NCBI RefSeq assembly: GCF_031769215.1
Contig: NW_026781917.1
Coordinates: forward strand, 2,170,001-2,234,000
Source of the DNA: Ylistrum balloti
Lineage: Eukaryota
Length of the DNA stretch: 64,000 nucleotides
Direction: 5' to 3'
Every line of letters begins with the position of its first letter. Position 1 is the first letter of the stretch. The translations under genes were made by a program, and so were the position numbers. The notes under the pieces were generated by a model. The model had not been told where the DNA came from and did not search any database. It saw only the letters and a program-made list of their open reading frames with translations. Shown piece by piece: positions 3,401 to 39,800 of the stretch.

Positions 3401-6400
3401 ATGTCCTGTATGACTAGTGTGTTATGTGTATTTGTACTTTGGTCCTGTATGACTAGTGTGTTATGTGTATTTGTACTGTATGTCCTGTATCACTAGTGAG
3501 TTATGTGTATTTGTACTGTATGTCCTGTATGGCTAGTGTTTTATGTGTATATTGTCTGTTTGTCCTGTACGACCTGTGTGTTATGTGTATTTGTACTGTA
3601 GGTCCTGTATGACTAGTGTGTTATGTGTATTTGTACTGTATGTACTGTTTGACTAGTGTGTTATGTGTAATTGTAGTGTTTGACTAGTGTGTTATGTGTA
3701 TTTGTAGTGTTTGACTAGTGTGTTGTGTGTATTTGTACTGTATGTCCTGTATGACTAGTGTGTTATGTGTATTTGTACTGTATGTCCTGTATGACTAGTG
3801 TGTTATGTGTATTTGTACTGTATGTCCTGTATGACTAGTGTGTTATGTGTATTTGTACTGTATGTCCTGTTTGACTAGTGTGTTATGTGTATGTTGTCTG
3901 TATGTCCTGTATGACTAGTGTATTATGTGTATTTGTACTGTATGTACTGTTTGACTAGTGTGTTATGTGTATTTGTACTGTATGTCCTGTATGACTAGTG
4001 TGTTATGTGTATTTGTACTGTATGTCCTGTATCACTAGTGTGTTATGTGTATTTGTGTTGTAGGTCCTGTATGAAAAGTGTGTTATGTGTATTTGTACTG
4101 TATGTCCTGTATGACTTGTGTGTTATGTGTATGTTGTCTGTATGTCCTGTATGACTAGTGTGTTATGTGTATTTGTACTGTATGACTAGTGTGTTATGTG
4201 TATTTGTACTGTATGTCCTGTATGACTAGTGTGTTATGTGAATTTGTACTGTATGTACTGTTTGACTAGTGTGTTATGTGTATTTGTAGTGTTTGACAAG
4301 TGTGTTATGTGTATTTGTACTGTATGTACTGTTTGACTAGTGTGTTATGTGTATTTGTACTGTATGTCCTGTATGACTAGTGTGTTATGTGTATATTGTC
4401 TGTATGTACTATATGACTAGTGTTATATGTGTATTTGTACTGTATGTACTGTATGACATGTGTGTTATGTGTATTTGTACTGTATGTCCTGTATGACTTG
4501 TGTGTTATATGTATTTGTACTGTGTGTCCTGTATGACTAGTGTGTTATGTGTATTTGTACTGTATGTCCTGTATGACTAGTGTGTTATGTGTATTTGTAC
4601 TGTATGTCCTGTATGACCTGTGTGTTATATGTATTTGTACTGTATGTCCTGTATGACTAGTGTGTTATGTGTATTTGTACTTTGGTCCTGTATGACTAGT
4701 GTGTTATGTGTATTTGTACTGTATGTCCTGTATCACTAGTGAGTTATGTGTATTTGTACTGTATGTCCTGTATGGCTAGTGTTTTATGTGTATATTGTCT
4801 GTTTGTCCTGTACGACCTGTGTGTTATGTGTATTTGTACTGTAGGTCCTGTATGACTAGTGTGTTATGTGTATTTGTACTGTATGTACTGTTTGACTAGT
4901 GTGTTATGTGTAATTGTAGTGTTTGACTAGTGTGTTATGTGTATTTGTAGTGTTTGACTAGTGTGTTGTGTGTATTTGTACTGTATGTCCTGTATGACTA
5001 GTGTGTTATGTGTATTTGTACTGTATGTCCTGTATGACTAGTGTGTTATGTGTATTTGTACTGTATGTCCTGATTGACTAGTGTGTTATGTGTATTTGTA
5101 CTGTATGTCCTGTTTGACTAGTGTGTTATGTGTATGTTGTCTGTATGTCCTGTATGACTAGTGTATTATGTGTATTTGTACTGTATGTACTGTTTGACTA
5201 GTGTGTTATGTGTATTTGTACTGTATGTCCTGTATGACTAGTGTGTTATGTGTATTTGTACTGTATGTCCTGTATCACTAGTGTGTTATGTGTATTTGTG
5301 TTGTAGGTCCTGTATGAAAAGTGTGTTATGTGTATTTGTACTGTATGTCCTGTATGACTTGTGTGTTATGTGTATGTTGTTTGTATGTCCTGTATGACTA
5401 GTGTGTTATGTGTATTTGTACTGTATGACTAGTGTGTTATGTGTATTTGTACTGTATGTCCTGTATGACTAGTGTGTTATGTGAATTTGTACTGTATGTA
5501 CTGTTTGACTAGTGTGTTATGTGTATTTGTAGTGTTTGACAAGTGTGTTATGTGTATTTGTACTGTATGTACTGTTTGACTAGTGTGTTATGTGTATTTG
5601 TAGTGTTTGACTAGTGTGTTATGTGTATTTGTACTGTGTGTCCTGTATGACTAGTGTGTTATGTGTATTTGTACTTTGGTCCTGTATGTCTAGTGTGTTA
5701 TGTGTATTTGTACTGTATGTCCTGTATGACTAGTGTGTTATGTGTATTTGTACTGTTTGTCCTGTATGACTAGTGTGTTATGTGTATTTGTACTGTATGT
5801 CCTGTATGAAAAGTGTGTTATGTGTATTTGTACTGTATGTCCTGTATGACTAGTGTGTTATGTGTATTTGTACTGTATGTCCTGTATGACTAGTGTGTTA
5901 TGTGTATTTGTGTTGTAGGTCCTGTATGACTAGTGTGTTATGTGTATTTGTACTGTATGTCCTGTATGACTAGTGTGTTATGTGTATTTGTACTGTATGT
6001 CCTGTATGAAAAGTGTGTTATGTGTATTTGTACTGTATGTCCTGTATGACTAGTGTATTATGTGTATTTGTACTGTATGTACTGTTTGACTAGTGTGTTA
6101 TGTGTATTTGTACTGTAGGTCCTGTATGACTAGTGTGTTATGTGTATTTGTACTGTATGACTAGTGTGTTATGTGTATTTGTACTGTATGTCCTGTATGA
6201 CTAGTGTGTTATGTGTATTTGTATTGTATGTCCTGTCTGACTAGTGTGTTATGTGTATTTGTACTGTATGTCCTGTATGACTAGTGTGTTATGTGTATTT
6301 GTACTGTATGTCCTGTATGACTAGTGTGTTATGTGTATTTGTACTGTATGTCCTGTATGACTTGTGTGTTATGTGTATTTGTACTGTATGTCCTGTATGA

Positions 6401-9187
6401 CTAGTGTGTTATGTGTATTTGTACTGTATGTCCTGTATGACTAGTGTGTTATGTGTATTTGTGTTGTAGGTCCTGTATGACTAGTGTGTTATGTGTATTT
6501 GTACGGTATGTCCTGTATGAAAAGTGTGTTACGTGTATTTGTACTGTATGTCCTGTATCACTAGTGTGTTATGTGTATTTGTACTGTAGGTCCTGTATGA
6601 CTAGTGTGTTATGTGTATATTGTCTGTTTGTCCTGTACGACCTGTGTGTTATGTGTATTTGTACTGTATGTCCTGTATGGCTAGTGTGTTATGTGTATAT
6701 TGTCTGTTTGTCCTGTGCGACCTGTGTGTTATGTGTATTTGTACTGTATGTCCTGTATGAAAAGTGTGTTATGTGTATTTGTATTGTATGTCCTGTATGA
6801 CTTGTGTGTTATGTGTATATTGTCTGTATGTCCTGTATGACTAGTGTATTAGGTGTATTTGTACTGTATGTACTGTTTGACTAGTGTGTTATGTGTATTT
6901 GTAGTGTTTGACTAGTGTGTTATGTGTATTTGTAGTGTTTGACAAGTGTGTTATGTGTATTTGTACTGTATGTCCTGTATGACTAGTGTGTTATGTGTAT
7001 ATTGTCTGTATGTACTATATGACTAGTGTGTTATGTGTATTTGTACTGTGTGTCCTGTATGACTAGTGTGTTATGTGTATTTGTACTGTATGTCCTGTAT
7101 GACTAGTGTGTTATGTGTATTTGTACTGTATGTCCTGTATGACTAGTGTGTTATGTGTATATTGTCTGTATGTACTATATGACTAGTGTGTTATGTGTAT
7201 TTGTACTGTGTGTCCTGTATGACTAGTGTGTTATGTGTATTTGTACTGTATGTCCTGTATGACTAGTGTGTTATGTGTATTTGTACTGTATGTCCTGTAT
7301 GACTAGTGTGTTATGTGTATTTGTACTGTATGTCCTGTATGACTTGTGTGTTATGTGTATTTGTACTGTATGTCCTGTATGACTAGTGTGTTATGTGTAT
7401 TTGTACTGTATGTACTGTATGACTAGTGTTATGTGTATGTTGTCTGTATGTCCTGTATGACTAGTGTGTTATGTGTATTTGTACTGTATGTCCTGTATGA
7501 CTAGTGTGTTATGTGTATTTGTACTGTATGTCCTGTATGACTAGTGTGTTATGTGTATTTGTACTGTATGTCCTGTATGAAAAGTGTGTTATGTGTATTT
7601 GTACTGTATGTCCTGTATGACTAGTGTATTATGTGTATTTGTACTGTATGTACTGTTTGACTAGTGTGTTATGTGTATTTGTACTGTAGGTCCTGTATGA
7701 CTAGTGTGTTATGTGTATTTGTACTGTATGACTAGTGTGTTATGTGTATTTGTACTGTATGTCCTGTATGACTAGTGTGTTATGTGTATTTGTATTGTAT
7801 GTCCTGTCTGACTAGTGTGTTATGTGTATTTGTACTGTATGTCCTGTATGACTAGTGTGTTATGTGTATTTGTACTGTATGTCCTGTATGACTAGTGTGT
7901 TATGTGTATTTGTACTGTATGTCCTGTATGACTTGTGTGTTATGTGTATTTGTACTGTATGTCCTGTATGACTAGTGTGTTATGTGTATTTGTACTGTAT
8001 GTCCTGTATGACTAGTGTGTTATGTGTATTTGTGTTGTAGGTCCTGTATGACTAGTGTGTTATGTGTATTTGTACGGTATGTCCTGTATGAAAAGTGTGT
8101 TACGTGTATTTGTACTGTATGTCCTGTATCACTAGTGTGTTATGTGTATTTGTACTGTAGGTCCTGTATGACTAGTGTGTTATGTGTATATTGTCTGTTT
8201 GTCCTGTACGACCTGTGTGTTATGTGTATTTGTACTGTATGTCCTGTATGGCTAGTGTGTTATGTGTATATTGTCTGTTTGTCCTGTGCGACCTGTGTGT
8301 TATGTGTATTTGTACTGTATGTCCTGTATGAAAAGTGTGTTATGTGTATTTGTATTGTATGTCCTGTATGACTTGTGTGTTATGTGTATATTGTCTGTAT
8401 GTCCTGTATGACTAGTGTATTAGGTGTATTTGTACTGTATGTACTGTTTGACTAGTGTGTTATGTGTATTTGTAGTGTTTGACTAGTGTGTTATGTGTAT
8501 TTGTAGTGTTTGACAAGTGTGTTATGTGTATTTGTACTGTATGTCCTGTATGACTAGTGTGTTATGTGTATATTGTCTGTATGTACTATATGACTAGTGT
8601 GTTATGTGTATTTGTACTGTGTGTCCTGTATGACTAGTGTGTTATGTGTATTTGTACTGTATGTCCTGTATGACTAGTGTGTTATGTGTATTTGTACTGT
8701 ATGTCCTGTATGACTAGTGTGTTATGTGTATATTGTCTGTATGTACTATATGACTAGTGTGTTATGTGTATTTGTACTGTGTGTCCTGTATGACTAGTGT
8801 GTTATGTGTATTTGTACTGTATGTCCTGTATGACTAGTGTGTTATGTGTATTTGTACTGTATGTCCTGTATGACTAGTGTGTTATGTGTATTTGTACTGT
8901 ATGTCCTGTATGACTTGTGTGTTATGTGTATTTGTACTGTATGTCCTGTATGACTAGTGTGTTATGTGTATTTGTACTGTATGTACTGTATGACTAGTGT
9001 TATGTGTATGTTGTCTGTATGTCCTGTATGACTAGTGTGTTATGTGTATTTGTACTGTATGTCCTGTATGACTAGTGTGTTATGTGTATTTGTACTGTAT
9101 GTCCTGTATGACTTGTGTGTTATGTGTATTTGTACTGTATGTCCTGTATGACTTGTGTGTTATGTTTTTGTTGTTTGTATGTCCTGT
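439..9187. repeat. 40-bp tandem satellite, about 220 monomers
   Basis: Monomer ACTAGTGTGTTATGTGTATTTGTACTGTATGTCCTGTATG repeats continuously, with 31-bp deletion variants and recurring diagnostic variants. The C/V/Y-rich ORFs here are by-products of the repeat. Confidence 0.98.
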
Positions 9188-11616: not shown

Positions 11617-12951
11617 ATGAGCAAAATGGATGTCGAAAAAACTGTTACCAACGACCGCCTGTTCATAAGAACTAACTTAGCTGCAAGTTTCACCTCTTCT
11701 GTTGAGTTCATTTTCCTGCCTTTGTTCTTGTAATGATAGTGATGACAACAGGGACCAGGCGCCAAGGGGAAACAAGAAACGTAAGAAAAAACGTTTCAAA
11801 ATATTTAGAAAAACCCACAGCGTGACGATTGCTACAGAAAACATGGCAGATCAACAGCAATGTGATTCATTGTCACTAAAACATCGGTTTACAGACATTT
11901 TTCAAAAGAAATATAAATCAAGACACTACAATGTTTCTAAACCAGCAACATACAATACTGTAAATGTTGATATTGAAAAAAGCGTTCTCAATGTTGACCA
12001 AAATAATGTTAATGCTTATATTGAAATACATCAACAGCAAATATGTTTAGGAGAGACAACCGAAAAGGATGACAGTAATAATTCTTCAAGGCGGAATGCG
12101 AAGGCGATTTGGATATCATCAGCTGAAAACAGTCATAGACATAGTTCACCGCAACCAGGGATATTTCTGCATGCAAGACGATGATATCAAGATAAGAAAT
12201 AAAGTCAACATCGTAGACTCGAAAGACTAGTAGGTTATCATATATAGAATATAATTAGTTCAATGATGATATTGTCTCAGTTATCCTTTTGTATTTTTCT
12301 CACACGCAGTCTAGCCTCAAAAACTTGCACCATAAGTTTCTTCAATTACGAGTCATAGACAAGTGAGTAGGTTTATGATGCAGTTGTATTGTAGGCTATG
12401 TTTTACCATATTCTGGGACTGTCTTTAAAGGTCTTCTTATTAAGTAACTCATTTGTACAATAGTAAATAATCCGATCCAAACTTCGGAAAAAGCATTGAT
12501 ATTAACCCTTTTGACAATTGCAATATACGACAGAGATAACATTGGGAAACGTGAAAGATCTACAAAACGGGTCTTCAGATCAGTTCAGGAGCAGTTACAC
12601 AAACCGACTGATTTTCTAGAATTAAAGCTAAAACATCACACATCTGCTGTGGAACCAGAATATCGCAAATCCGCAAACAAGAAAAAAGAGGAAGTCCTAT
12701 ACAATCGGTGTAGTTTTGCTTGTTCGAAACCTTCTTGCAGTGTATGGGGACCAGCCAGTGTTAGTAATTTTGTTGTCAGGTCACAATTGCCCTTGGATAA
12801 AAATGTAAAACAATTAATGTCAGATGTTCAGTTGATGAAAAATCATTTGTTGTCCGAATCCAATGACACTTCGTTCGATTGGCCGGTTAACAAACAAACA
12901 AACACACTGCCGTGTAGACGATATTGTACACAGTGTCCTTATAACCTGTAA
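11617..12951 (+). pseudogene. Paralogue A of the coiled-coil/RHIM-like family (pseudogene)
   Basis: Acceptor TTTGTTTCAG ends at 11600; ATG at 11617/11626. Similar to copy C (SSFSC...DSDD, KKR..IFRK.HS, HYNVS; exon 2 TDFLE.KLKHHTSA...WGP...DKNVKQLMSDVQLMKN.LLSE). Lesions: +1 frameshift near 11688-11701, further shifts near 12.10-12.16 kb and in exon 2, donor GT>AT (12192-12193), acceptor AG>AA (12522-12523). Confidence 0.88.
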
Positions 12952-13462: not shown

Positions 13463-13830
13463 TTGTGTGGTACAAAGCTGGACGTGTTTGATGCTCGTTA
13501 GTTTGCCTGTTGGTTCCGTTGTGTGGTATAAAGCTGGACGTGTTTGATGCTCGTTAGTTTGTCTGTTGGTTCTGTTGTACGATATAAAGCTGGACGTGTT
13601 TGATGCTCGTCAGTTTGCTTGTTGGTTCTGTTGTACGATATAAAGCTGGACGTGTTTGATGCTCGTTAGTTTGCCTCTTGGTTCAGTTGTTGTTTACCTT
13701 GTTCTCATTTGAGAACGTCACATTACATACTTGGATTAACAAAAATTTTCATGGTTGGTTCAACGAAGCAGAATACGCTTACTCTTACGGAACACCTGGT
13801 CTTACTCTCCTGGTACTTTTTTCACGAATC
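13463..13830 (+). mobile_element. Dispersed non-autonomous element with an internal 54-bp tandem array (about 4 units)
   Basis: Units AAAGCTGGACGTGTTTGATGCTCGTTAG..., then hairpin GTTCTCATTTGAGAAC, then the CTTACTCTTACGGAACACCTGG tail. The same layout occurs at 42.1-43.6 kb and inverted at 47.6-47.8 kb. Confidence 0.8.
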
Positions 13831-16384: not shown

Positions 16385-17062
16385 ATGATGGAGAATTCGT
16401 TAAGGAGAGAATTAGAACTAACGCAAAAAGATGGAATTTCCAAGAGAGAACGTGAACTAATGCGAAGAGAGGATAACATTTCTAATAGAGAACGTGAACT
16501 AATGCAAAGAGAGGATAACATTTCTGAAAGAGAACGTGAACTAATGCAAAGAGAGGATAACATTTCTGAAAGAGAACGTGAACTAATGCAAAGAGAGGAT
16601 AACATTTCTGAAAGAGAACGTGAACTAATGCAAAGAGAGGATAACATTTCTAAAAGAGAACGTGAACTAATGCAAAGAGAGGATAACATTTCTAAAAGAG
16701 AACGTGAAATAAAAAAGACAGAATTAAAGCTAAATCGGAGAGAAGATGGTTTTACAAGTAGAGAATTACAACTTTCGCGAAGAGAAGATGAAGATTCCAG
16801 GGGAGAAGTAGAATTATTGCGAAGAAGAAGAGATGAAAATTCATCGAAAGATTTATTACTTTCGCGAGAGGATAACATACCAAGACATAAAGATGTCCTT
16901 TTATCTAGACAGCGTATCATTACTGTGAATAAAACTCATATTCATGTAGGCGATATTGTAAAAAATCACCAGCACATCAATATATCTAAATGTAAGACTC
17001 TACAGATGCGAACCGGAATGGTAGAAGACGATGAAAGAATTGGAAGCAATGATTCTGCATGA
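16385..17062 (+). pseudogene. Paralogue B: partial copy with a 225-aa open frame and expanded coiled coil
   Basis: Six 42-bp repeats encoding RERELMQREDNIS(E/K/N). C-terminal DIVKNHQHINISKCKTLQMRTG aligns with DIVHTPLYVEISECKTVQIGTG of copy C. In-frame TGA at 16376-16378 just upstream. No N-terminal region or terminal WGP exon found nearby. It could still be a translated short gene. Confidence 0.6.
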
Positions 17063-18565: not shown

Positions 18566-19562
18566 TTAGCACATGCCGTAGTTAAGTTTTGATGTGCCAC
18601 CTCAGACATTTGTTGCAACCGCGTGCATAGTGTTTCATAAACACATCTTGTCTTCTTTTACAAACACTATTTATCGTTTTGGATTGAAAGGATACCGGCA
18701 TTAAAACGCTAAATGGAAATGAGGTACTCCAATGTTGCTGACAAGTTTACGTTTTCAAAAAAAAAACTGTGATCAAATCTCTGTGTACTTGAGTTTAAAT
18801 CTATATATAAATATGTATTTCAGTTCAGATATGAACATTCGTTGATTTCGTTATCTGCTGTTGTATTTGTGATGATTAGACATGACAAATATAAGCGTTG
18901 CTCGATGGACTTGATGCACTCTGCGTTTATTTATTAAACCAAATCATTATCAGAACAAAATAAATAATTCGTGGAACAGTTAGATAGCTATATTAGGTAC
19001 AACAGACATGTGAAGGCGCTACAACAGACCGCAGTTTTCACCACAGGTAAGAAAACATCGACCTCTGTTGAAAGATATTGATGAAAATTTGAACAGACGT
19101 ATATTTAATTACCTTTGTTTTATTGAAGTTGCTGTTTTTCTCTCTCCATGTGTTAAGCATGACATTGTACACTTTTAAGCTTTCCAAGGAGACGGACAGA
19201 AATTTTACCTTTCCTCTTTGTCTTCTTAGCGAAAGACATAACCTAAATTTACCAGTGTGTATTGTGGGACATTCGTCGATAAATGCTTCCAATCTATCAG
19301 TAAAAATCTCGTACTTAGATCGAAATCTGATTCATATAAGAGTGTCTTATAATCAATTATGTATCATATTTGTGAACAACATACTATTTATCTGTGACGT
19401 TTAAGTGAAGGAATATCAGTTGATTTAGAAGTCATATATATATATAAACATTTAGATAAACTGCAGTAACGACAGTGGTTATCTTTAAGCTGTAAACAAG
19501 AATGCAAAATATTCATAAAAAAAAGAATGATTTTAGATTTGTTTTCAGTGCTTACTTCCAAA

Positions 19563-21014
19563 ATGGCTACAGGGAAATCTGTTTCTAACAATCCTCTGAT
19601 GAGGAGTATCTCAACGGAAAGTGGTGCTTCATCAAGACGTTCAAGTTCATTTTCCTGTATAAGTACAGACGACAACAGCGATGACACCATGGACAGGACA
19701 AATGAGGAAAAGAGAAAAGCGAAGAAAAAAAGTCACACACTTTTCCGGAAAGCTCATAGTGAAACAAAAGATAAAAACGCGGTAGGTAAACATCAGCGTG
19801 ATTCTTCCAAGCTTAAACGTCGATTAAGAAACTTTTTTAAAACAAAGAGGAAATCAGATCATTTCAATGTTTCCTTTTCACACACAGACGATATTGATAG
19901 TTGTGATACTGTTGACACTGAAAGGCATGTGCAACAGAAAGGTATACAAGATAATACCCAACCGGATTTCATTAATGATTTTTCACAACGCCATTCAAAG
20001 ATTGGTGATAATACTTCAAATGGGCTCACTGTAGAAAGCTGCGAGAACGATGAATTGCGACTCATAACAAACAAAAAGGAAGAGGAAATGAATGAGAAAC
20101 AAAAATATCGATTAGACAACAGCTTAAAGTCAGTTTCAAAGAAAGAATCAGAGCTTTCGAGAAGGGATGAGGATTTTTTGAGGAAGGAAAATGATCTTTT
20201 ATCCAACGCCATAAAAACTTTGAATGAAATGGCTGCTGTCCTTAGCGATATTGTGCACACTCCACTATACGTTGAAATATCTGAATGCAAGACTGTTCAG
20301 ATAGGAACTGGAAGCGAGGATGTCCAACAGAATTTGCAACAAGTTCGCAAAATGCTGGACAGTATATGTGCAAAGTATGACGATATCAAGGTAAAAACAT
20401 ATGCGACAACCAATAACCAACAACTTATAGCAATAATTTATTGTATACATGGTTAAATCAATATACATCAATGTTGGCTTTTCCTGGCGTCCCACAACAT
20501 CTCAATATTACGTTCCTTGCTTTACATTTGCGAAATTTTGCTGCATTCATATATTACATAATTGCCATTAATTTACCATAATTAGATGAGATTATAGTAA
20601 ACATCAAAATATTTTGCAGTATCATTTAACATACATCATAATTTCGATTTGCAGCATACGACGGAGGCAACACTAAATAGTGTGAAAAAACTACAAAATG
20701 AGTCTTCGGGTCACAAAAAGCAGTTGCACAAACTAGCTGAATTTCTTGAATCAAACCTGAGACGTCATACATCTGCTGAGGAGCCAGAACACTTAACAAA
20801 ATCTACAAACAATACACAAAATCAAGTGCCTTCTTGTGATCGGTGTAACCCTGCTAGTCCGAAACCTTCTGGTAATATATGGGGACCGTCTACCGTTCAT
20901 GATTTTGTTGTCAGCTCACATGTAACTATAGATAAAAACGTGAAACAGGTGATGGCAGATGTTCAGTTGATCAAAAACAGTTTATTGTCAGAACACCAAA
21001 GTACATATATGTGA
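19563..21014 (+). CDS. Paralogue C: intact two-exon gene, 395-aa coiled-coil protein with a RHIM-like VQIG motif and a conserved CxxC/WGP C-terminal region
   Basis: Acceptor GTTTTCAG ends 19548. CDS exon 19563-20390 (828 nt, phase 0, donor GTAAAA) joins exon 20655-21014 (acceptor TTTGCAG, ends TGA) with no interruption. Exon boundaries sit at homologous positions in paralogues A and D. Confidence 0.85.
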
Positions 21015-22040
21015 ACAATACTACCTTTTTAAAACAAAAACGGAAAGAATTACCTGGAAAAAGTAGCAATAAGAGACTGTTGAGAAGTGTTCCGAAACAC
21101 TAGACACTAAACACAGAAAAAAAATCAGTATCAACTTTTTTCTATGAAATTATTGATGATTCATTATGAGATATCATAGCTGTGTAATGGTTGAGCAGAT
21201 GTACATTTTTCCCTCGGCTTGGCGATTTGGTCCCGTAGATAGTGAGTTCGAGGCCTGGACAGGACACAAGTCAAAAATTATCTTCCTTCGTCAAACCTGT
21301 CATTAGGTACAAAATATCAATACATCATATGCGATAAAGTTGTTGATTCTAAGTCTCACTTAGTGTAAAATGCACACCTTGATCCCTGTTCTTTCAAGTT
21401 TGTTCATCAAAAATCTTAAAACAATGATATCTTAAGATAGAAATGATAGAAAATGTACAACAGTTGGATTATACGATCATACCAAAACAAATATTTCGTT
21501 TGAAATATCGGAGACAAATCCCTGAATTGTGATTGATATATATCTAAAGGGAAATAACTCAAATATAAGTGTTATGTGTGTAGATTTACTCGGCAATTAT
21601 TTCACGCATCGTGATCGTGAGGTCAGATTTGTCTATATGGTAAGATAATGGGAATACACCACAACGGTGGTGAAATCATCAATATTCGGAAAGTTTATGA
21701 TATATATCAGTATCCTTTACAAGTTGTATGGTTTCGTGCACTAAATTCTGTACCAAAAACAACCAAGTAAAGTGTATGTAGTGGTGATATTCCAAATGGC
21801 TGATATCAAGGTTACAGAATAAAGTTGTACGTTACACCCACTGATTAGACATGACTGAGATCTAATTTCCAACGTCACAAAATAGTTGGCACAATGCCAG
21901 ATTCTAAATAAAGAATGATCAAGGTTAATGAGATGACGTTCCCCTTCATATTCGTAGAAACAGATTTCGATGTAATATGACGTATGTAATGAGCTCACTT
22001 ACCGATATAGATTTGTAAAATCGTTCTTAACAGTAAATGT

Positions 22041-22197: not shown

Positions 22198-22610
22198 TCT
22201 CTCTTTTTTTTCTTTTTAACTGAAAGATCTTTAACACTATAACACTAATAATAAAATGAGTTATATTTACCATATCAATAGTGTTTGTTATTTCTTATCA
22301 TTTAGCACAGTTCTCAGACCAAAAGTCTTTTCATAAAAGCAATACAACGGTTGTATTTCTTGTAAATGATAAGAACTATTTTATATTGAATGATATCCAA
22401 ATAAATCACAATGTTCTTGAACTTCGTCAATGAGTAGGATAACATTAACAAACCAAAGAATAGATCAAAGAACATATGATAATAGAACGCGTATTGGAAC
22501 ACGTTACGGAACACATCAGGGAACACTTGGAACACATCCTGCCAGGAAATCACAACTAAATATTGTTTTGACTAGAACTATAACTGTTTAAGCTTTGTAT
22601 ATGTTAATAT

Positions 22611-25600
22611 TCACTGGAACCGACTTGGTTTCCGAACTTCGCGACCTGATTTAGTTTTATATGGACTTTTGACTAAATCACGAGGCTTATCCTCAGGACT
22701 GACAGTTGGTACACATGCAGGTTGTGACTTGAGGTCAACCACGGAGTGTATTGTTGGACTTTGAACTGCAGGACTTGTGATCTCCAGCTTTATATCCTCA
22801 TCATCCAGTGTAGGTAAGGACTTTGTTACTTTGAGATGCTTCCTGTTCCTTCTGTATTTCTTTCCATCTGATGTCTGTACTACATTGGATCTAGGTGTCT
22901 GGTGTTTATCAACTACAGTGCTGTGCGTCCATGTTCTTTCATTACCTGTTTTCATCATGACAGTGTCATTCTCTTGTAATGGTTTGCGACCTTTTGTTGC
23001 ATGTCTATTAAAATAATTTCTTTGTCGAAATTGTCTTAACTTTAAACTGTCCTGAATCTCGTCTGACGCTCATGGTTTCAACAATGGGGTTGCTGTTGGT
23101 AGGGTGGTCTTAAGTCGCCTTCCCATGAATATTTGTGCAGGTGAAAGGTCAATTCCATCGATCGGTGAGTTTCGATAATCGAGTATTGCTAGGTATGGGT
23201 CATTTGCCTTCTTCAGTAGTCCCTTTACTGTCTGTACCATTCTTTCCGCTTGGCCATTTGATGAGGGGTAATGTGGACTCGTGGTAGTGAGTTGAAAACC
23301 GTAGTCTTTTGAGAATTTGGTAAATTCCCGACTCGCAAACTGTGGTCCGTTGTCACTTATGACTTGGTCTGGAATTCCATAGTTGGAAAACTGGCTCTTT
23401 ACATGGTTAATGACAGAGCTTCTTGTCAGTCCTTGTAATTTTGAGATTTCAGGCCACTTTGAAAAATAGTCTACGCTAAGCAGGTAATGTTGCCCCTTAA
23501 GTTCAAATAGATCCATTGCCACTTTAGCCCATGGTCGGTTTGGTATGTCGTGGGGTATAAGTGGTTCCTTTGCGTTGCTGTTTGTGTGTCTAGCACAAAT
23601 GTTGCATGTGGCAACCTTCTCTTCTATATCAGTACTCATTCCTGGCCAAAATAGTACTTCCCTCGCGCGTGCCTTACATTTGACCATACTAAGATGCGCC
23701 TCATGTATCCGGTCAAGCATTTCTGGTCGCAGAGACTTTGGAATGATCAGTTTGTGTACTTTGAACATCAATCCATCAATGCAGGTAATTTCGTCGCGAT
23801 AATTCCAGTATGTCTGAATTTGTTGATCAACTTCCTGTTTGGTTTCCGGCCAACCAGTCATTATTTGTTGTCTCAGCCTTGACATCTCTAGGTCATTCTC
23901 TGTACCTTCTTTGATAGTTTTGTACTTTTCTGATGAGACCGTTAAATATGCCAACAAATAGAGTTCATTGACAGCAAGATCCTCTACTAAAGTTTCCTCT
24001 GTTTCCTCTAGGAATGCCCTTGACAGTGTGTCAGCTACATATAACAATTTGCCTGGTTTATAGGTCACCTCCAGGTCATACTTTTGGAGTGTGAGCACAG
24101 TTTCTGAAGTCGAGCAGGTACTTTATACATAGACTTCTTAAATATGCTCTGTAACGGTTTGTGGTCAGATTCCACTTGAACTTTCCTCCCATAAAGGTAT
24201 TGATGGAATTTTGTGCATCCGTACACTATTGCGAGAGTCTCTTTCTCTATCTGTGAGTAGCGTTCCTAAGTAGGAGTTAGTGCCCTTGATGCATATGCAA
24301 TAGGTTTACCGTCCTGTATGATTGCTGCACCCATTCCTTTTGAGCTACTATCCACTGTCATTACAATCGGTTTGTTTGTGTCAAAGTATGTCAACACTGG
24401 TGCCTTGGTCACCATCAGCTTCAATTTATTGAAACTTTTTTCCTGTTGGGCTCTCCATTCCCAATGTGTTCTTTCCCAGGAGTTGTCTTAGTGGTGCGGC
24501 TACCTCAGACAAGTTTGGCAGGAGTTTTGCTAGATATTGTACAAATCCTAAGAAGGTCATCAGTTCCTTTTGATTCTGTGGTGCCTTCATTCCTTTAACC
24601 GCTCTAACCTTGTCAGGGTGTGGTCTAAGTCCATCCTTGCTAAGGACGTGGCCAACATATGTCACTTCCTGTCTCCCAAACTGACATTTATCAGCATTTA
24701 ATTTGAGGTTATAAGCTTTGAAGGACTTCTTGTAGCCTTCTGTCATGTTCCTCGACTGACTTTCCCCAGACTAAAATGTCATCTACTATAGCTTCTGCGC
24801 CATCAATGTCTTCCACCATGTTTGACATTACTGACTGAAAAACTTCGGGTGCAGAGTTCAATCCAAATGGCATGCGGAGAAATCTATAGCGTCCAAATGG
24901 TGTGTTGAATGTACATAGCTTTGAACTGGGCTCGTCAAGTTGTAATTGCCAAAACCCAGACGTAGCATCCAGTTTGGAGAAATATTTGGCTTCCGGAATC
25001 CATGCTACTATTTCCTCAATGGTCAACATAGGATAGTGTTGTCTCTTGATAGCTGTATTCAAATCTCTTGGGTCCAGACATATTCTGATTTTACCATTTG
25101 GCTTGGTAACCGTTACCATGCTATTAACCCAGTCTGTAGGTCCTTTCTCAAGCACAATTATGCCATTTTTTCCCATTTGTGCCAATTCCAGTTTTACCTT
25201 GTCCCTTAATGCCACCGGCACTTTTCTCGGAGGGGGTGGGGGGGGGGGGGGGGGGTGGGGGGGGGGGGGGGGGGGTGTGTATCACCGGCTGTTGTACTGT
25301 ACTGTTAATATGTATTGTGTGATATCCTGGTAGACAGCCTACTCCACTAAATAGTTCGCTGTACTCTTCTTTTAGCTTTTCGTAGCGTACTTGACTATCA
25401 TTGTTTGTAGAGCTTCTGTTCAGCCCAAATAAGCGTTTCACCAGTCCAATCGACATAGCGCTCTCTGCTCCTATGATTGTAGGGGCTGTTTTCTCAATTA
25501 CTTGAAATTGTATCACATGATTGTTGTTGTCCTTGAAATTACATTGAAGCTTCACAGTTCCAATTGATTTAATTGCATGACCACTATACGACCTCAGCAT

Positions 25601-27086
25601 GGCTTCAGATTTCTCTAGTGGGGTTTTCACCTGTAATGACTTCAGGGTTTGTTGACTTATAACATTGCACCTGGCCCCTGTGTCTACTTGTGTTCTTAAT
25701 GTTTTGTTGTTCACTATACAACACACTGTCCAATCATCATTGAGTCTGTTTACTGGCAAGTCATTTTCCATTCCTACATACAAATCTGTCTCTCTAGCAT
25801 CACTTGTACTGTCATCTGTGAGGTAATTCTCCACCACCTGTACTAACATTTTACTGTTCTTTTTGTTGTACTTTGGTTTCTCACTACGACATTGGCTCGC
25901 AAAATGATTCATCTTTTTGCACAGATTACACTTCTTACCATATGCAGGACATGTTGCTCCTTTGAATTTGTGTTCATACCCACACTTGTTACATTTCACT
26001 TCAGTTTTTTCATGTCTCTGTCTCGTACTTTGTGTATTTCTGCTCTTCTTATTCGTTGTTTGTTTAACGATGTGGACCTTGGGGTCCTCTTGACTAAACA
26101 TACTTTTCAGCTGTTTCTGTGATATTTCGTGTGTCCTGGCTATATCCATTGACTTCTGTAGTGTCAGTTCAGAACCTTCATTAATAAGTTTTTCTCGAAC
26201 TTTAGCTGACTTGACACCCAAGATTATGTGATCATGGACGATTTCATCTTCCATCTCAGGAGCATAACAGTGATGTCGAATGAGTCCAAAGAAATACAAA
26301 CTAAACGCCTTTAATGAGTTCCTTTATTACATATACAAAGTTCCTAGTTCCTACAGCCATAGTCCACAATCATCACAAACACAGTGTAGGGGTTCTTGGT
26401 TGCACCTAGCTTGCGCCCCAACCTGCGGTAAAAAACTGAAAAATACAGAAATTAACCTGTCCTTAGTACATATTTTACCTTTAGAGCCACAAAACAAACA
26501 TATTTCAACAAAATTAATCAAATTTCAAACGTTTAAACCGTATTAAAGTTACCTCATGGGTCACCTAAGCCTTGCCAAATTTGCATGTCTGTTTCCTTTG
26601 GACTTTCACGTAAACATATCCCATGATGCATTTTTCCACGACGTACAAAGAATGAACTCTGAACCCTGACCTGACTACCAGAGCGGACGGACAATATAAA
26701 ACTAGCGTTTCACTACAATAACCACAGTCTTTAAATAAGACTCTCAAGTCTGTCATGGATTGTTCAAACGGTTCATCTTTAGACTGAACCCGGGACTTCA
26801 GCCGATACCGTGCAAATATTATATTTGACTTGGGTTCACAGTAATTTTCAAAGCCATTGAAGTACGTTTCGAGCTTTTTTCTTTCATCTGCGGTTACATT
26901 CCATGTAGAGAAGATGTTTCTTCCCTTTTCTCCAACCCATAGCATTAGATAATTACATTTTGGTTCTTCATTCTTACCAGCAAGCGGTCCACCAAATGTA
27001 AATTCACAATGAGTTTTGAATGCTTTGAATGCCGTCGGTAGGTCGTTTGATGACCAGTCCATTTTGGGGTATTTGTCCTGTTCCAT
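22611..27086 (-). pseudogene. Gypsy gag-pol coding region, broken
   Basis: Split across ORFs 26565-27086, 25148-26299, 24709-25221, 24426-24746, 23070-24098 and 22611-22958 by an insertion in gag, a poly-C expansion, frameshifts, a TAG in RNase H (RALTPT*ERYSQIEKE) and a TGA in the integrase C-terminal region. Confidence 0.93.
26269..26717 (-). mobile_element. 449-bp insertion, probable solo LTR nested in the Gypsy gag
   Basis: Flanked by a 5-bp direct repeat ATAAC (26264-26268 and 26718-26722). Ends are TGTAGTG...CATCACT on the minus strand (TG...CA with one change), with AATAAA about 55 nt from its 3' end. Removing it restores gag ...FKDCGY-APEMEDEIVHDHIILG. Confidence 0.82.
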
Positions 27087-27108
27087 CTTTTGACAATGAT
27101 TTGACTTT

Positions 27109-28339: not shown

Positions 28340-29290
28340 ACCGATTGGGAGAACTGTTCAATAAAGAACTAATGAGAGATCGACAGAAGAGAGCGAATGT
28401 TAATTCAGGGATGGAATTAGAGGGACAAAAACATTACATTTTTGTTAGAGAATCGGGACAAACGAGAAAAGAATTTAAACATTTAAGATGAAAATCAGAA
28501 CTGTCTCAAAAAGAAGGTTAAATTTTCTGGAGAGAATAAAAACTTTCGCGAAGAGATGATGAAAATTCAAAAAGAGAATTAGAAATTTCGCGAAGGGCAG
28601 CTGAAATATCAAGGATATAATTTGAATTTTCGGGAAAAGAAGATGAAAATAACAGGACAAATGGCTTTTTATCTAGTGATAATAACGTTACTGTAAATAC
28701 TTGAAATGAATTGGCTACTGCCCTTGATGAGATTATGCGAAATCATCGATAGGTCAAAATATCTAGATGTGAGAATGTTCGGATCGGAACCGGAAATGTG
28801 GAACAAATCAAACATAATTTGTAGCCAGTGTCTTCTATACTGGGCGATATGTGTGAACAGTACGAAGATATACAGGTAAACGTTTATTTGAAAACTACGT
28901 CTAGCAGCATCTAAAACTGCATACAATTAATTGCAAAAATGAACCTACTTAACTACTGTTAATTTCATATATTTTACAGTCCAATATTTAAGGTAACCAT
29001 TTCTATTCACAATATGTACTTCTAAAAGAAGCAGTAACACAAACTGACTGATTTCCTAGAAACAAAAACTAAAACATCATACATCTGCTGAGGAGACAAA
29101 TAAGTTAAGTAAAACCGAAAATAATTTACAAGAAAAAATGTTTATGTGTGATCTATGTCATTTGTCAAATACAAAACCATCTAGCAATATATGGGGACCG
29201 CCTGCAGTTCACGGTTCTGTTGTAAGCTCTCGTGTGATCCTGATTAAAAATGTAAAACAAATGATCTAGATACCCAGTCGCTTAAAAGAA
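28340..29290 (+). pseudogene. Paralogue D of the coiled-coil/RHIM-like family (pseudogene)
   Basis: The first-exon remnant ends ...NELATALDEIMRNHR*VKISRCENVRIGTGNVEQIKHNL*PVSSILGDMCEQYEDIQ at 28875 with an intact GT donor, and has seven in-frame stops. The second-exon remnant (about 28980-29290) reads HKLTDFLE/LKHHTSAEE...MCDLCHLSNTKPSSNIWGPPAVHGSVVSS...KNVKQ with frameshifts. The 5' limit is approximate. Confidence 0.9.
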
Positions 29291-36877: not shown

Positions 36878-39800
36878 ATGACTTCAATGTGTACACGGAT
36901 CTTTCTAATAACCATGTATACAACCATTGTTCGAGGTAAGATGGCTGTAATATCTGATACTGAGCAAGAACAGAAACTAAAAAAATAATCTACATTGATG
37001 CATTCTTAAAAAAAAGTTCAATACAATTTGATCTTTGATTTTACTTAGGTTTCACATTCAATTTTCGCGATCGTTCCTGTTTGGTCTTGTTCAGGAGGAT
37101 TAAATTTAGCGATCCTTCCTGTTTGGTCTTGTTCAGGAGGATTAAGTTTAGCGATCGTTCCTGTTTGGTCTTGTTTCTGAGAATTAAATTTAGCGATCGT
37201 TCCTGTTTGGTCTTGTTCAGGAGGATTAAATTTAGCGATCGTTCCTGTTTGGTCTTGTTCAGGAGGATTAAGTTTAGCGATCGTTCCTGTTTGGTCTTGT
37301 TCAGGAGGATTAAATTTAGCGATCCTTCCTGTTTGGTCTTGTTCAGGAGGATTAAGTTTAGCGATCGTTCCTGTTTGGTCTTGTTCAGGAGGATTAAGTT
37401 TAGCGATCGTTCCTGTTTGGTCTTGTTTCTGAGAATTAAATTTAGCGATCGTTCCTGTTTGGTCTTGTTCAGGAGGATTAAGTTTAGCGATCGTTATTGT
37501 TTGGTCTTGTTCAGGAGGATTAAATTTCGCGATCGTTATTGTTTGGTCTTGTTCAGGAGGATTAAATTTAGCGATCCTTCCTGTTTGGTCTTGTTCAGGA
37601 GGATTAAGTTTAGCGATCGTTCCTGTTTGGTCTTGTTTCTGAGAATTAAATTTCGCGATCGTTCCTGTTTGGTCTTGTTCAGGAGGATTAAATTTAGCGA
37701 TCGTTCCTGTTTGGTCTTGTTCAGGAGGATTAAATTGAGCGATCGTTCCTGTTTGGTCTTGTTCAGGAGGATTAAATTTAGCGATCGTTCCTGTTTGGTC
37801 TTGTTCAGGAGGATTAAGTTTAGCGATCCTTCCTGTTTGGTCTTGTTTCTGAGAATTAAATTTAGCGATCGTTCCTGTTTGGTCTTGTTCAGGAGGATTA
37901 AATTTAGCGATCGTTCCTGTTTGGTCTTGTTCAGGAGGATTAAATTTAGCGATCGTTCCTGTTTGGTCTTGTTCAGGAGGATTAAGTTTAGCGATCGTTC
38001 CTGTTTGGTCTTGTTTCTGAGAATTAAATTTAGCGATCGTTCCTGTTTGGTCTTGTTCAGGAGGATTAAGTTTAGCGATCGTTATTGTTTGGTCTTGTTC
38101 AGGAGGATTAAATTTCGCGATCGTTATTGTTTGGTCTTGTTTCTGAGAATAAAATTTAGCGATCGTTATTGTTTGGTCTTGTTCAGGAGGATTAAATTTC
38201 GCGATCGCTCCTGTTTGGTCTTGTTTCTGAGAATTAAATTTCGCGATCGTTATTGTTTGGTCTTGTTCAGGAGGATTAAATTTCGCGATCGCTCCTGTTT
38301 GGTCTTGTTTCTGAGAATTAAATTTAGCGATCGTTCCTGTTTGGTCTTGTTCAGGAGGATTAAATTGAGCGATCGTTCCTGTTTGGTCTTGTTCAGGAGG
38401 ATTAAATTTAGCGATCGTTCCTGTTTGGTCTTGTTCAGGAGGATTAAATTTAGCGATCGTTCCTGTTTGGTCTTGTTCAGGAGGATTAAATTTAGCGATC
38501 GTTCCTGTTTGGTCTTGTTCAGGAGGATTAAATTTAGCGATCGTTCCTGTTTGGTCTTGTTCAGGTGGATTAGATTTCGCGATTGTTCCTGTTTGGTCTT
38601 GATCAGGACGATTAAATTTTGTGTATGTCTATACATAGGTATCCATGTTTTCAGGCATATAACATACATTTCGTGATATTTTGATTTTCTTTTGAATCCC
38701 TGATATTATTATCAATTATACAATAATAAGGTGTTTTTGTTATTAGATTACTCTTTTAAATGGCGTTTTTGCATGGCAACAAAATCTATCACATCATAGA
38801 TGACAAAATAATATAAAAATGGCGCTGTCGACACAAGGATTGTCTCTTAGTCTTTCATAGAAATGTTATAATTTCTTATTTTTCTCCAGTATGTTCGAGT
38901 TGTGCTTCCACGATAACGTTACAGGCGGAACATTACTCACAGACATTGGTGTCACTTGATACAACTCGAAATAAAACAGGGTGAGTTGTAAAGCTTATAC
39001 AAAAGGCAAAAAAATATCACCCTCCAAGATAAAATAGAGCCAAATGGTAAATTAAACAGCATCATAAAGCTGCTGTCTCCTTCTAGGAGTCGCCACTGAT
39101 GCTAAGAGCCTGTAGTGATCGAAAGTAATGTCAAAATCTAGATGTAAATATATACTATATTTCAATATTTCGCCAGATTCCTACTTTTCTAGCTCGTTTC
39201 TTAGGCCTCCAAATTTGACACTTTTATCACCAGTGTTCCATATAATTACGATATAACTGTATTATCGATTTTCCTAGAATTACGAAAACAGCTGTAACGT
39301 TGATATAACATTTTACTATTAAGTCTCCTATTTTTATATGGTTAGAAAGGATATCATAGTCAATACAAAGTCGAACTTCGTTATCTCGAACTTGTATAAC
39401 TCAAAGACTATTTAATTCTAAAAATTCCGGTCAAACTTAACACAAAACATTCGAACTCACTTATGTCGAATAATCGGATAACTCGAAATTTTCAAACGAC
39501 CCCGCCGACTTCTAGATAACGGAGTTTTACTGTAAATCATTTTAATTGAATATTGCATAGAATAATCTGTTTCAAATACATTGTCTTCACATTGATGATA
39601 GTTTTAATTCTCGATTTCTTCGGACCACAGGCCATATAGATGTTCTTGGCTGATACGAGCGTCCAACACAAGCCACCTAATAGAAATACAGATGTTAAAT
39701 GTCTACCTGTCTCCAGCATCGTCTTGTCAAATGGATAACGTCATCCTCTCCAAAGGTATACAAATATTACAATGATTGAATTTTACAACTGTTTGACCTT

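What the first reader, a model, noticed from the sequence alone, without database searches (positions are those of the whole stretch)
20268..20315. RHIM-like motif YVEISECKTVQIGTGS in the only intact paralogue
Seen: VQIG at 20295-20306, preceded by V-E-I-S-E-C. Paralogue D has VKISRCENVRIGTGN at the same position, keeping the G-x-x-N; B has INISKCKTLQMRTG. The I-S-x-C scaffold is kept in all four copies while the flanking coiled coils diverge. This beta-prone island sits between two helical segments. Caveat: copy C has Ser where RHIMs usually have Asn, and a four-residue core can arise by chance.
Basis: partly seen in the sequence, partly recalled or inferred. Interest (0 to 1): 0.8.

Follow-up and report, generated by a model that had tools for sequence, protein, structure and literature searches.

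The report
RHIM look-alike loop in scallop protein
A scallop-only coiled-coil protein has a short non-helical stretch that, in this species alone, spells the VQIG core of mammalian cell-death amyloid motifs; related scallops lack that core, so it is most likely an ordinary conserved linker.

Summary
YVEISECKTVQIGTGS lies at 20268-20315, with VQIG at 20295-20306. It forms residues 236-251 of the annotated two-exon gene LOC132562544 of the scallop Ylistrum balloti (395 aa). Copies B and D carry the quoted variants. Copy A keeps only the ISxCK part at DNA level, followed by a deletion. AlphaFold2, run twice, puts the segment in a low-confidence non-helical break (232/233-251) between two long heptad helices.

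The RHIM reading is only weakly supported. An exhaustive search found just two relatives, both scallop proteins. Pecten maximus has IHIG at the tetrad and Mizuhopecten yessoensis has IALS. The invariant residues are Pro234, Tyr236, Cys242, Gly250 and Asp253, and none of them lies in the VQIG tetrad (245-248). There is no Pfam RHIM match, and no match to solved RHIM chains. The score against the human RIPK3 12-mer is modest (27 of 5000 shuffles reach it). The score against RIPK1 is at chance level.

In favour, the four aliphatic positions that drive RIPK nucleation are kept in all copies.

Best reading: a conserved linker or turn in a scallop-family orphan coiled-coil protein (0.6). Amyloid-type function has a probability of about 0.1. 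The scan also noted RHIM-like motifs elsewhere in this genome; I did not check those.

The parts
19563..20390 (+). Exon 1 of copy C (LOC132562544, residues 1-276): Ser-rich and polybasic N-terminus, helix 1, the island, and the start of helix 2
   Evidence: 100% match to annotated 395-aa protein P0001. Exon 1 plus exon 2 translate exactly to P0001. Donor GT at 20391.
20655..21014 (+). Exon 2 of copy C (residues 277-395 plus stop): rest of helix 2, CxxC, the IWGPSxVxDFVVSS segment and a C-terminal helix
   Evidence: Acceptor ...tttgcag at 20654 with a phase-0 intron. Pecten maximus has its intron at the same place.
20268..20315 (+). The reported motif YVEISECKTVQIGTGS, residues 236-251
   Evidence: Direct reading. 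Non-helical with low pLDDT in both AlphaFold2 runs.
20295..20306 (+). VQIG tetrad (V245-G248)
   Evidence: Aligned tetrads are IHIG in Pecten and IALS in Mizuhopecten, VRIG in D and LQMR in B.
20043..20255 (+). Helix 1 (residues 161-231), an amphipathic heptad helix before the island
   Evidence: AlphaFold2 H161-231 with pLDDT up to 95. Heptad pattern 178-233.
20316..20390 (+). Start of helix 2 (residues 252-276); it continues in exon 2 to about residue 315 (20655-20771)
   Evidence: AlphaFold2 H252-315, or H252-292 plus H297-315. Heptad pattern 252-313.
16976..17017 (+). Copy B island INISKCKTLQMRTG, in the fragment ORF 16385-17062
   Evidence: B lacks the N-terminal region and exon 2. It carries a 42-bp repeat at 16436-16712.
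28753..28797 (+). Copy D island VKISRCENVRIGTGN, in the pseudogene 28585-29266
   Evidence: Several in-frame stops and frame changes.
12160..12198 (+). Copy A remnant: ISxCK-coding DNA fused by a deletion to the DDIK/donor end of exon 1; the tetrad is missing
   Evidence: Local alignment with C, 17 of 20 bases and then 20379-20397. Copy A spans 11705-12870 and has a frameshift in exon 2.

Best explanation
The segment is a conserved non-helical linker that joins two long amphipathic heptad helices. The protein belongs to an orphan coiled-coil family found only in scallops (Pectinidae). A proline (P234) ends helix 1. Next comes a short stretch of alternating hydrophobic and polar residues (Y-V-x-I-S-x-C-x-x-V-x-I) that looks like a beta-hairpin or turn. 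Then G-T-G and an S/N-E-D helix-capping box start helix 2.

Its likely job is structural. It could let the two helices fold back on each other, or form a small beta element that helps the coiled coil pair up. This is inferred, not shown.

The canonical VQIG in Ylistrum copy C is one state of two variable positions, not the conserved feature. What is shown: the gene model, the three-species family, the pattern of conservation and the predicted secondary structure. What is inferred: the hairpin or turn role.
For: The gene is real and under constraint. It is annotated. Pecten has the same two-exon structure. Overall dN/dS is about 0.3.

A contig from a second public run, 22 bases different, has 10 substitutions in 828 nt of exon 1, none in exon 2, and 12 substitutions plus 3 indels in the 264-nt intron. 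It shows no change at 20229-20425.

The family is tiny. An exhaustive phmmer search of 1.84 billion representatives found only Pecten maximus LOC117329717 (40% identity) and Mizuhopecten yessoensis LOC110440323 (31%). Word searches found nothing more.

The invariant island residues are P234, Y236, C242, G250 and D253, and none of them lies in the VQIG tetrad. The centre of the island, EISECKTVQ against NMAGCRDIH, shares only the Cys with the Pecten orthologue.

Island dN (0.31) is like helix 2 (0.24) and the C-terminal part (0.29), so the island does not stand out. AlphaFold2 twice gives helix, a 20-residue break, then helix. Heptads lie on both sides. Even-numbered island positions are charged (E238, E241, K243), as on a soluble beta-hairpin.
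Against: No confident 3D model exists (pTM 0.23-0.24, island pLDDT below 50), so a hairpin or turn is not demonstrated. The aliphatic residues at -8, -6, 0 and +2, conserved in all five sequences, would also suit an amyloid core. Among the Ylistrum paralogues the island is the best-kept part of the coiled-coil region, which suggests more than a passive linker. No expression data were found.
Confidence: 0.6

Rival explanations
1. It is a true RHIM-like (or cRHIM-like) amyloid nucleation motif. The flanking coiled coils bring several copies together. The V-x-I ... V-x-I-G strands then stack into a cross-beta signalling seed, which may recruit other RHIM-bearing scallop immune proteins.
For: Copy C fits (V/I)-Q-(V/I/L/C)-G. 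All four aliphatic positions essential for RIPK1/RIPK3 nucleation are aliphatic in C, D, B, Pecten and Mizuhopecten (-8, -6, 0, +2). The BLOSUM62 score against the RIPK3 12-mer is 26, reached by 27 of 5000 shuffles and by no other of 60,433 six-frame positions in the window.

Pecten IHIG resembles the functional shrimp IMD cRHIM VHIG (PMC10268257). Pecten and D keep G-x-x-N. The segment is non-helical. RIPK1 homologues with a RHIM exist in bivalves (PMC12119088). Unchecked scan notes report other RHIM-like motifs in this genome.
Against: No Pfam RHIM hit at E<=10. No solved RHIM chain is found by the sequence or by a family profile. The RIPK1 12-mer score is at chance, reached by 1029 of 5000 shuffles. 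At p of about 0.005 per protein, a proteome would hold a hundred or more equal matches.

Gln is present only in C and B. The fourth-position Gly, the one residue absolute even in cRHIMs, is Ser in Mizuhopecten and Arg in B. The 12-residue core has 2-4 charged residues, against 0-1 in RIPK1/3; in-register stacking of like charges is unfavourable (inference).

A helix starts 1-2 residues after G250, where RHIMs have their third strand. Helices on both sides leave little room for 4.8 A stacking (inference). The protein has no kinase, death, TIR or Z-alpha domain.
Confidence: 0.12
2. The island is part of a small Cys-dependent fold. The invariant Cys242 acts with Cys269 and the C-terminal CxxC (C337, C340) as a metal site or disulfide/redox site. 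This would tie the C-terminal region to the helical hairpin.
For: C32, C242, C269, C337 and C340 are invariant across the three species, although overall identity is only 23-40%. Cys242 is kept in every copy, including the pseudogenes, and is better conserved than the tetrad. Cys-rich clusters precede the conserved IWGPS segment in Pecten, Mizuhopecten, A and D.
Against: No zinc-finger or other Pfam model matches. The CxxC spacing is not kept in Mizuhopecten. AlphaFold2 gives residues 316-368 as disordered. Three species are too few to tell invariance from shared ancestry.
Confidence: 0.1
3. The motif has no specific function. The gene is a young, fast-evolving orphan. The apparent conservation among B, C and D only reflects recent duplication and easier alignment of a low-repeat stretch.
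For: Three of the four local copies are decayed. The N-terminal half evolves fast: dN is 0.77, and 7 of 9 changed codons between the two haplotypes are non-synonymous. The flanks of B are repeat-expanded, which lowers their alignability.
Against: The frame, intron position and island framework (P, Y, C, G, D) survive in three scallop genera even though synonymous sites are saturated (dS above 1). Exons are less polymorphic than the intron.
Confidence: 0.1

Closest known systems
Mammalian RHIM (RIPK1, RIPK3, ZBP1, TRIF; viral M45, ICP6), Pfam PF12721
   Same: Copy C has a canonical tetrad VQIG. It has aliphatic residues at -8, -6, 0 and +2, and a Cys at -3 as in human RIPK3 (NIYNCSGVQVGD). The segment is non-helical and beta-prone, 16-20 residues long.
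   Different: There is no profile match. The tetrad is not conserved in orthologues. Charged residues sit inside the core. No Asn/Tyr/hydrophobic third strand follows the Gly; a helix starts there instead. Coiled-coil helices flank it directly, where RHIMs have long disordered regions. The host protein has no kinase, death, TIR or Z-alpha domain.
Arthropod cryptic RHIM (Drosophila PGRP-LC/LE and Imd; shrimp IMD VHIG and SRB2)
   Same: It fits the loose [V/I/L]-x-x-G core. Pecten IHIG is close to shrimp IMD VHIG. It occurs in an invertebrate and lacks Gln in most copies.
   Different: The fourth-position Gly, the only absolute cRHIM residue, is missing in Mizuhopecten (Ser) and copy B (Arg). 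The host protein is unrelated to IMD-pathway proteins. The cRHIM definition is too loose to discriminate.
Helix-loop-helix hairpins of long coiled-coil proteins (generic antiparallel coiled-coil turns)
   Same: Two heptad helices of about 60-70 residues are separated by a roughly 20-residue break. The break starts with Pro and ends with Gly-x-Gly plus a capping box. Structural neighbours of the Pecten model are generic coiled-coil proteins such as p115, Hook, CFAP58 and SMC-like.
   Different: No sequence family match. The break is longer and more beta-patterned than a minimal turn. An antiparallel arrangement was not shown.

Membership tests
RHIM (mammalian type, PF12721) | Core tetrad (V/I)-Q-(V/I/L/C)-G present | tested here: met
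   VQIG at residues 245-248 of copy C. Definition from 10.64898/2026.02.19.706818.
RHIM (mammalian type, PF12721) | Core tetrad conserved among orthologues and family members | tested here: not met
   Pecten IHIG and Mizuhopecten IALS; D VRIG and B LQMR.
RHIM (mammalian type, PF12721) | Significant match to the family profile or to known RHIM sequences | tested here: not met
   No Pfam RHIM hit at E<=10 on the segments or the whole protein. phmmer and a family-profile hmmsearch against PDB, which holds RIPK1/RIPK3 RHIM chains, give 0 hits at E<=10. The 12-mer score against RIPK1 is at chance.
RHIM (mammalian type, PF12721) | Aliphatic nucleation tetrad at -8, -6, 0, +2 (hRIPK3 V450, I452, V458, V460) | tested here: met
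   V237, I239, V245, I247. These positions are aliphatic in all five aligned sequences.
RHIM (mammalian type, PF12721) | Third beta-strand or second interface after the Gly (G-x-x-N-x-hydrophobic) | tested here: not met
   Copy C reads GTGSEDVQQ, and a helix is predicted from residue 252. Asn at +6 occurs only in Pecten and D.
RHIM (mammalian type, PF12721) | Lies in a flexible, unstructured region that allows in-register stacking | tested here: inconclusive
   The island is non-helical with low pLDDT, but it is bounded within 1-4 residues by confident long helices.
RHIM (mammalian type, PF12721) | Forms amyloid and mediates homotypic interaction | not testable with these tools
   Needs ThT, SDD-AGE or EM assays, or a swap assay.
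Cryptic RHIM (arthropod IMD pathway) | [V/I/L]-x-x-G with the fourth Gly absolutely conserved | tested here: not met
   Gly in C, D and Pecten; Ser in Mizuhopecten; Arg in B. Definition from PMC10268257.
Cryptic RHIM (arthropod IMD pathway) | Carried by an IMD-pathway protein (PGRP, IMD with death domain, Pirk, Relish) | tested here: not met
   No Pfam domain in P0001, P0002 or P0003.
Pectinidae orphan coiled-coil family (LOC132562544 / LOC117329717 / LOC110440323) | Shared architecture: heptad helix, P-x-Y-h-x-h-x-x-C island, heptad helix with LDxxCxxY, Cys cluster, (I/V)W segment; phase-0 intran after D(D/K)(I/L)K | tested here: met
   Alignment A3. E = 4.8e-63 and 3.2e-08. The intron position is shared with Pecten; 'intran' in the feature name should read 'intron'.

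The most novel reading that the evidence does not exclude
The island is a working amyloid switch of a new type: a RHIM-like cross-beta core set between two coiled-coil helices in a scallop-specific adaptor. The aliphatic V-x-I...V-x-I frame is kept while Gln and Gly drift. Coiled-coil oligomerisation would trigger nucleation, and the protein would plug into a wider molluscan RHIM network.
Probability: 0.1. Interest if true: 0.75.

Novelty: new member of a known kind. Interest (0 to 1): 0.27.

Why it matters
If the segment did nucleate amyloid, it would be the first RHIM-type switch found inside a coiled coil. It would also be a handle on amyloid signalling in molluscs, where only RIPK1-like RHIMs have been reported (PMC12119088).

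On the present evidence it matters in two smaller ways. It is a worked example that a canonical four-residue RHIM core, even with good flanking positions, can be a lineage-specific accident. It also gives a first description of an unnamed, fast-evolving scallop gene family with a local birth-and-decay cluster.

Tried and rejected
- Pfam scans found only sub-threshold coiled-coil noise. I scanned the segments from C, B and D at E<=10, and all ORFs and homologues.
- phmmer with the segment and hmmsearch with a B/C/D profile against PDB gave no hit at E<=10.
- Word-index protein searches with exon 1, the C-terminal region and the three-species profile found nothing outside the family.
- ESM Atlas feature and structure neighbours were only generic long-helix proteins.
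- Foldseek of the AlphaFold2 model against PDB found nothing.
- The search for RNA runs found no RNA data, only one DNA run. I used that run to compare a second haplotype.
- The supplements of PMC12119088 did not list scallop RIPK1 accessions, so I could not confirm a RHIM partner in scallops.
- Literature searches for RHIM in bivalves gave nothing specific.
- I considered whether copy A's 'ISAC' was a frame artefact. The DNA alignment favours true homology plus a deletion, although MAFFT first aligned it elsewhere.
- dN/dS by region is of limited use because dS is saturated.

Full report
**What is there.** The window is AT-rich animal DNA with introns, satellites and a retrotransposon. The ORF holding the finding matches, at 100%, the annotated 395-aa protein 'uncharacterized protein LOC132562544' of Ylistrum balloti, a saucer scallop (P0001).

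The gene has two exons, 19563-20390 and 20655-21014, separated by a phase-0 GT..AG intron. The quoted peptide YVEISECKTVQIGTGS is encoded exactly at 20268-20315 and VQIG at 20295-20306. It forms residues 236-251.

**The four copies.** tblastn of the two exons against the window finds three more copies.
- Copy D (28585-29266) has several stops and frame changes. It reads VKISRCENVRIGTGN at 28753-28797.
- Copy B (16385-17062) is an open fragment made of a 42-bp repeat expansion (RERELMQREDNIS units) followed by INISKCKTLQMRTG. It has no N-terminal part and no exon 2.
- Copy A (11705-12870) lacks the coiled coil and the tetrad. Its DNA at 12160-12179 matches the ISECK(T) codons of C at 17 of 20 bases. 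It then continues with the DDIK/donor end of exon 1, as after a deletion of about 85 nt.

The one qualification is that A keeps only the first half, out of frame. Among B, C and D the 42-nt island is 74-76% identical, against 44-68% in the flanks.

**Structure.** AlphaFold2 on the single sequence gives helix 161-231 (pLDDT up to 95), a break at 232-251 (pLDDT below 50 at 234-250), then helix 252-315. With the three-species alignment the result is the same: H159-232, break, H252-292.

Overall confidence is low (pTM 0.23-0.24), so only secondary structure is usable. Both helices show heptad periodicity. Chou-Fasman windows rank 233-248 and 354-365 as the most beta-prone parts of the protein.

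**How RHIM-like is it?** The published definition is an 18-22 residue motif with the core (V/I)-Q-(V/I/L/C)-G (10.64898/2026.02.19.706818). Deep mutagenesis there singles out an aliphatic tetrad: hRIPK1 Y531, I533, I539, I541 and hRIPK3 V450, I452, V458, V460. These are positions -8, -6, 0 and +2.

Copy C has V237, I239, V245 and I247 at exactly those positions. It also shares a Cys at -3 with the RIPK3 12-mer NIYNCSGVQVGD (PMC9918910).

I scored this quantitatively with ungapped BLOSUM62.
- Against the RIPK3 12-mer the score is 26. It is reached by 27 of 5000 shuffles of the protein and by no other of 60,433 six-frame positions of the window.
- Against the RIPK1 12-mer TIYNSTGIQIGA the score is 15, reached by 1029 of 5000 shuffles.

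A per-protein probability near 0.005-0.01 is interesting for one protein. It is expected more than a hundred times in an animal proteome, and this scan reads many windows.

Profile methods see nothing. There is no Pfam RHIM hit at E<=10 for the segments of C, B and D or for the whole protein. There is no PDB chain at E<=10 for the segment or for a B/C/D profile, although RIPK1/RIPK3 RHIM fibril chains are deposited.

**The decisive comparison.** An exhaustive phmmer search of 1.84 billion cluster representatives finds only two relatives. They are Pecten maximus LOC117329717 (P0002, 410 aa, 40% identity, E = 4.8e-63) and Mizuhopecten yessoensis LOC110440323 (P0003, 301 aa, 31%, E = 3.2e-08). 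The family is thus confined to scallops. It has no Pfam domain. In Pecten it is a single gene with the same intron position.

The aligned islands read:
- Ylistrum: PLYVEISECKTVQIGTGSED
- Pecten: PLYVNMAGCRDIHIGTGNED
- Mizuhopecten: PTYIKLSRCENIALSHGGGD

The invariant residues are P234, Y236, C242, G250 and D253. The tetrad is VQIG, IHIG and IALS in the three species. Gln is found only in Ylistrum (C and B). The fourth-position Gly is lost in Mizuhopecten and in B; this is the one residue said to be absolute even in arthropod cryptic RHIMs (PMC10268257).

Between Ylistrum and Pecten the centre of the island shares only the Cys. Island dN (0.31) is like helix 2 (0.24) and the C-terminal part (0.29). 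It is well below the N-terminal half (0.77), and dS is saturated. So the island belongs to the better-conserved C-terminal 60% of the protein but does not stand out, and what is conserved in it is not the RHIM core.

What is kept everywhere is the alternation of aliphatic residues at -8, -6, 0 and +2. This is the one family-wide feature compatible with a RHIM-like core. It fits a plain beta-hairpin equally well.

**Other arguments against amyloid stacking.** These are inference from general principles.
- The 12-residue core carries 2-4 charged residues in every family member (E238, E241 and K243 in C). RIPK1 has 0 and RIPK3 has 1.
- The sequence after the Gly is G-T-G-S/N-E-D, a helix-capping box, and helix 2 starts at residue 252. 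RHIMs have their third strand there.
- Long helices begin within 1-4 residues on both sides. That leaves little freedom for layers spaced 4.8 A apart.

**Is the gene alive?** No RNA run was available. One DNA run holds a contig that differs at 22 bases and so probably represents a second haplotype. It shows:
- 10 substitutions in exon 1 (828 nt) and none in exon 2;
- 12 substitutions and 3 indels in the 264-nt intron;
- an in-frame 9-nt insertion after 20204;
- nine changed codons, all upstream of residue 223, of which seven are non-synonymous.

The island and everything after it are unchanged. Together with the conserved frame and intron in Pecten, this supports a functional gene with a fast-evolving N-terminal half.

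**Interpretation.** The best-supported reading (0.6) is a conserved helix-breaking linker, probably a turn or small beta-hairpin. It sits between the two heptad helices of an orphan scallop coiled-coil protein, and VQIG is a lineage-specific state.

The rivals are:
- a true RHIM-like or cRHIM-like nucleation motif (0.12);
- a Cys-dependent metal or redox fold involving the invariant C242, C269, C337 and C340 (0.1);
- no specific function (0.1).

Literature shows that RHIM-bearing RIPK1 homologues exist in bivalves such as zebra mussel (PMC12119088). Unchecked notes of this scan report other RHIM-like motifs in this genome. A partner network is therefore conceivable, but nothing here ties this protein to it.

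**Verdict.** The RHIM label holds as a pattern resemblance in one copy only. It fails the profile test and the conservation test. Interest is modest.

Noticed in passing
window 20655-21014 (residues about 337-371); copy A 12586-12870; copy D 29069-29266: The part best conserved among paralogues and orthologues is not the island. It is a C-terminal CxxC cluster followed by (I/V)WGPSxVxDF(V/M)VSSxV, a second beta-prone stretch, and an amphipathic helix (52-53% identity between copies). Its function is unknown.
   Followed up: partly
window 19563-19850 (residues 1-96): The N-terminus has a conserved SSFSCIS Cys motif followed by two polybasic stretches (KRKAKKK; KLKRRLRNFFKTKRK). Pecten also has these. 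The pattern looks like a lipidation-plus-basic membrane anchor or a nuclear localisation signal.
   Followed up: no
window 19500-21100, against run X1: A second haplotype has an in-frame 9-nt insertion after 20204 and seven non-synonymous changes, all upstream of residue 223. The N-terminal half is highly polymorphic and the C-terminal half is invariant.
   Followed up: partly
window 16436-16744: Copy B carries a 42-bp (14-codon) tandem expansion, 6.6 copies at 97% identity, encoding RERELMQREDNIS units. This is recent repeat growth inside the coiled-coil region of a gene fragment that is still open.
   Followed up: partly
window 22600-27100, minus strand: A broken LTR-type retrotransposon lies between copies C and D. 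It has gag-aspartyl protease, reverse transcriptase (RVT_1) and integrase (H2C2 zinc domain plus rve core) in separate ORFs.
   Followed up: partly
window 439-9187: A 40-bp minisatellite of about 224 copies (89% matches) with a very strong GC and AT skew fills the first 9 kb of the window.
   Followed up: no
window 37063-38619; 42115-43526 and 13474-13690; 60653-61099: There are further tandem arrays: 42-bp x 37, 56-bp x 25 with a short 3.9-copy array of a very similar 56-bp unit near copy A, and 45-bp x 10. The long ORFs over them are repeat artefacts. An assembly gap of Ns lies at 44310-44466; I left it alone.
   Followed up: no
window 51225-51626 (+) and 55377-55913 (-): Two ORFs have hydrophobic, transmembrane-looking stretches and no Pfam match. 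They may be exons of single-pass membrane proteins.
   Followed up: no
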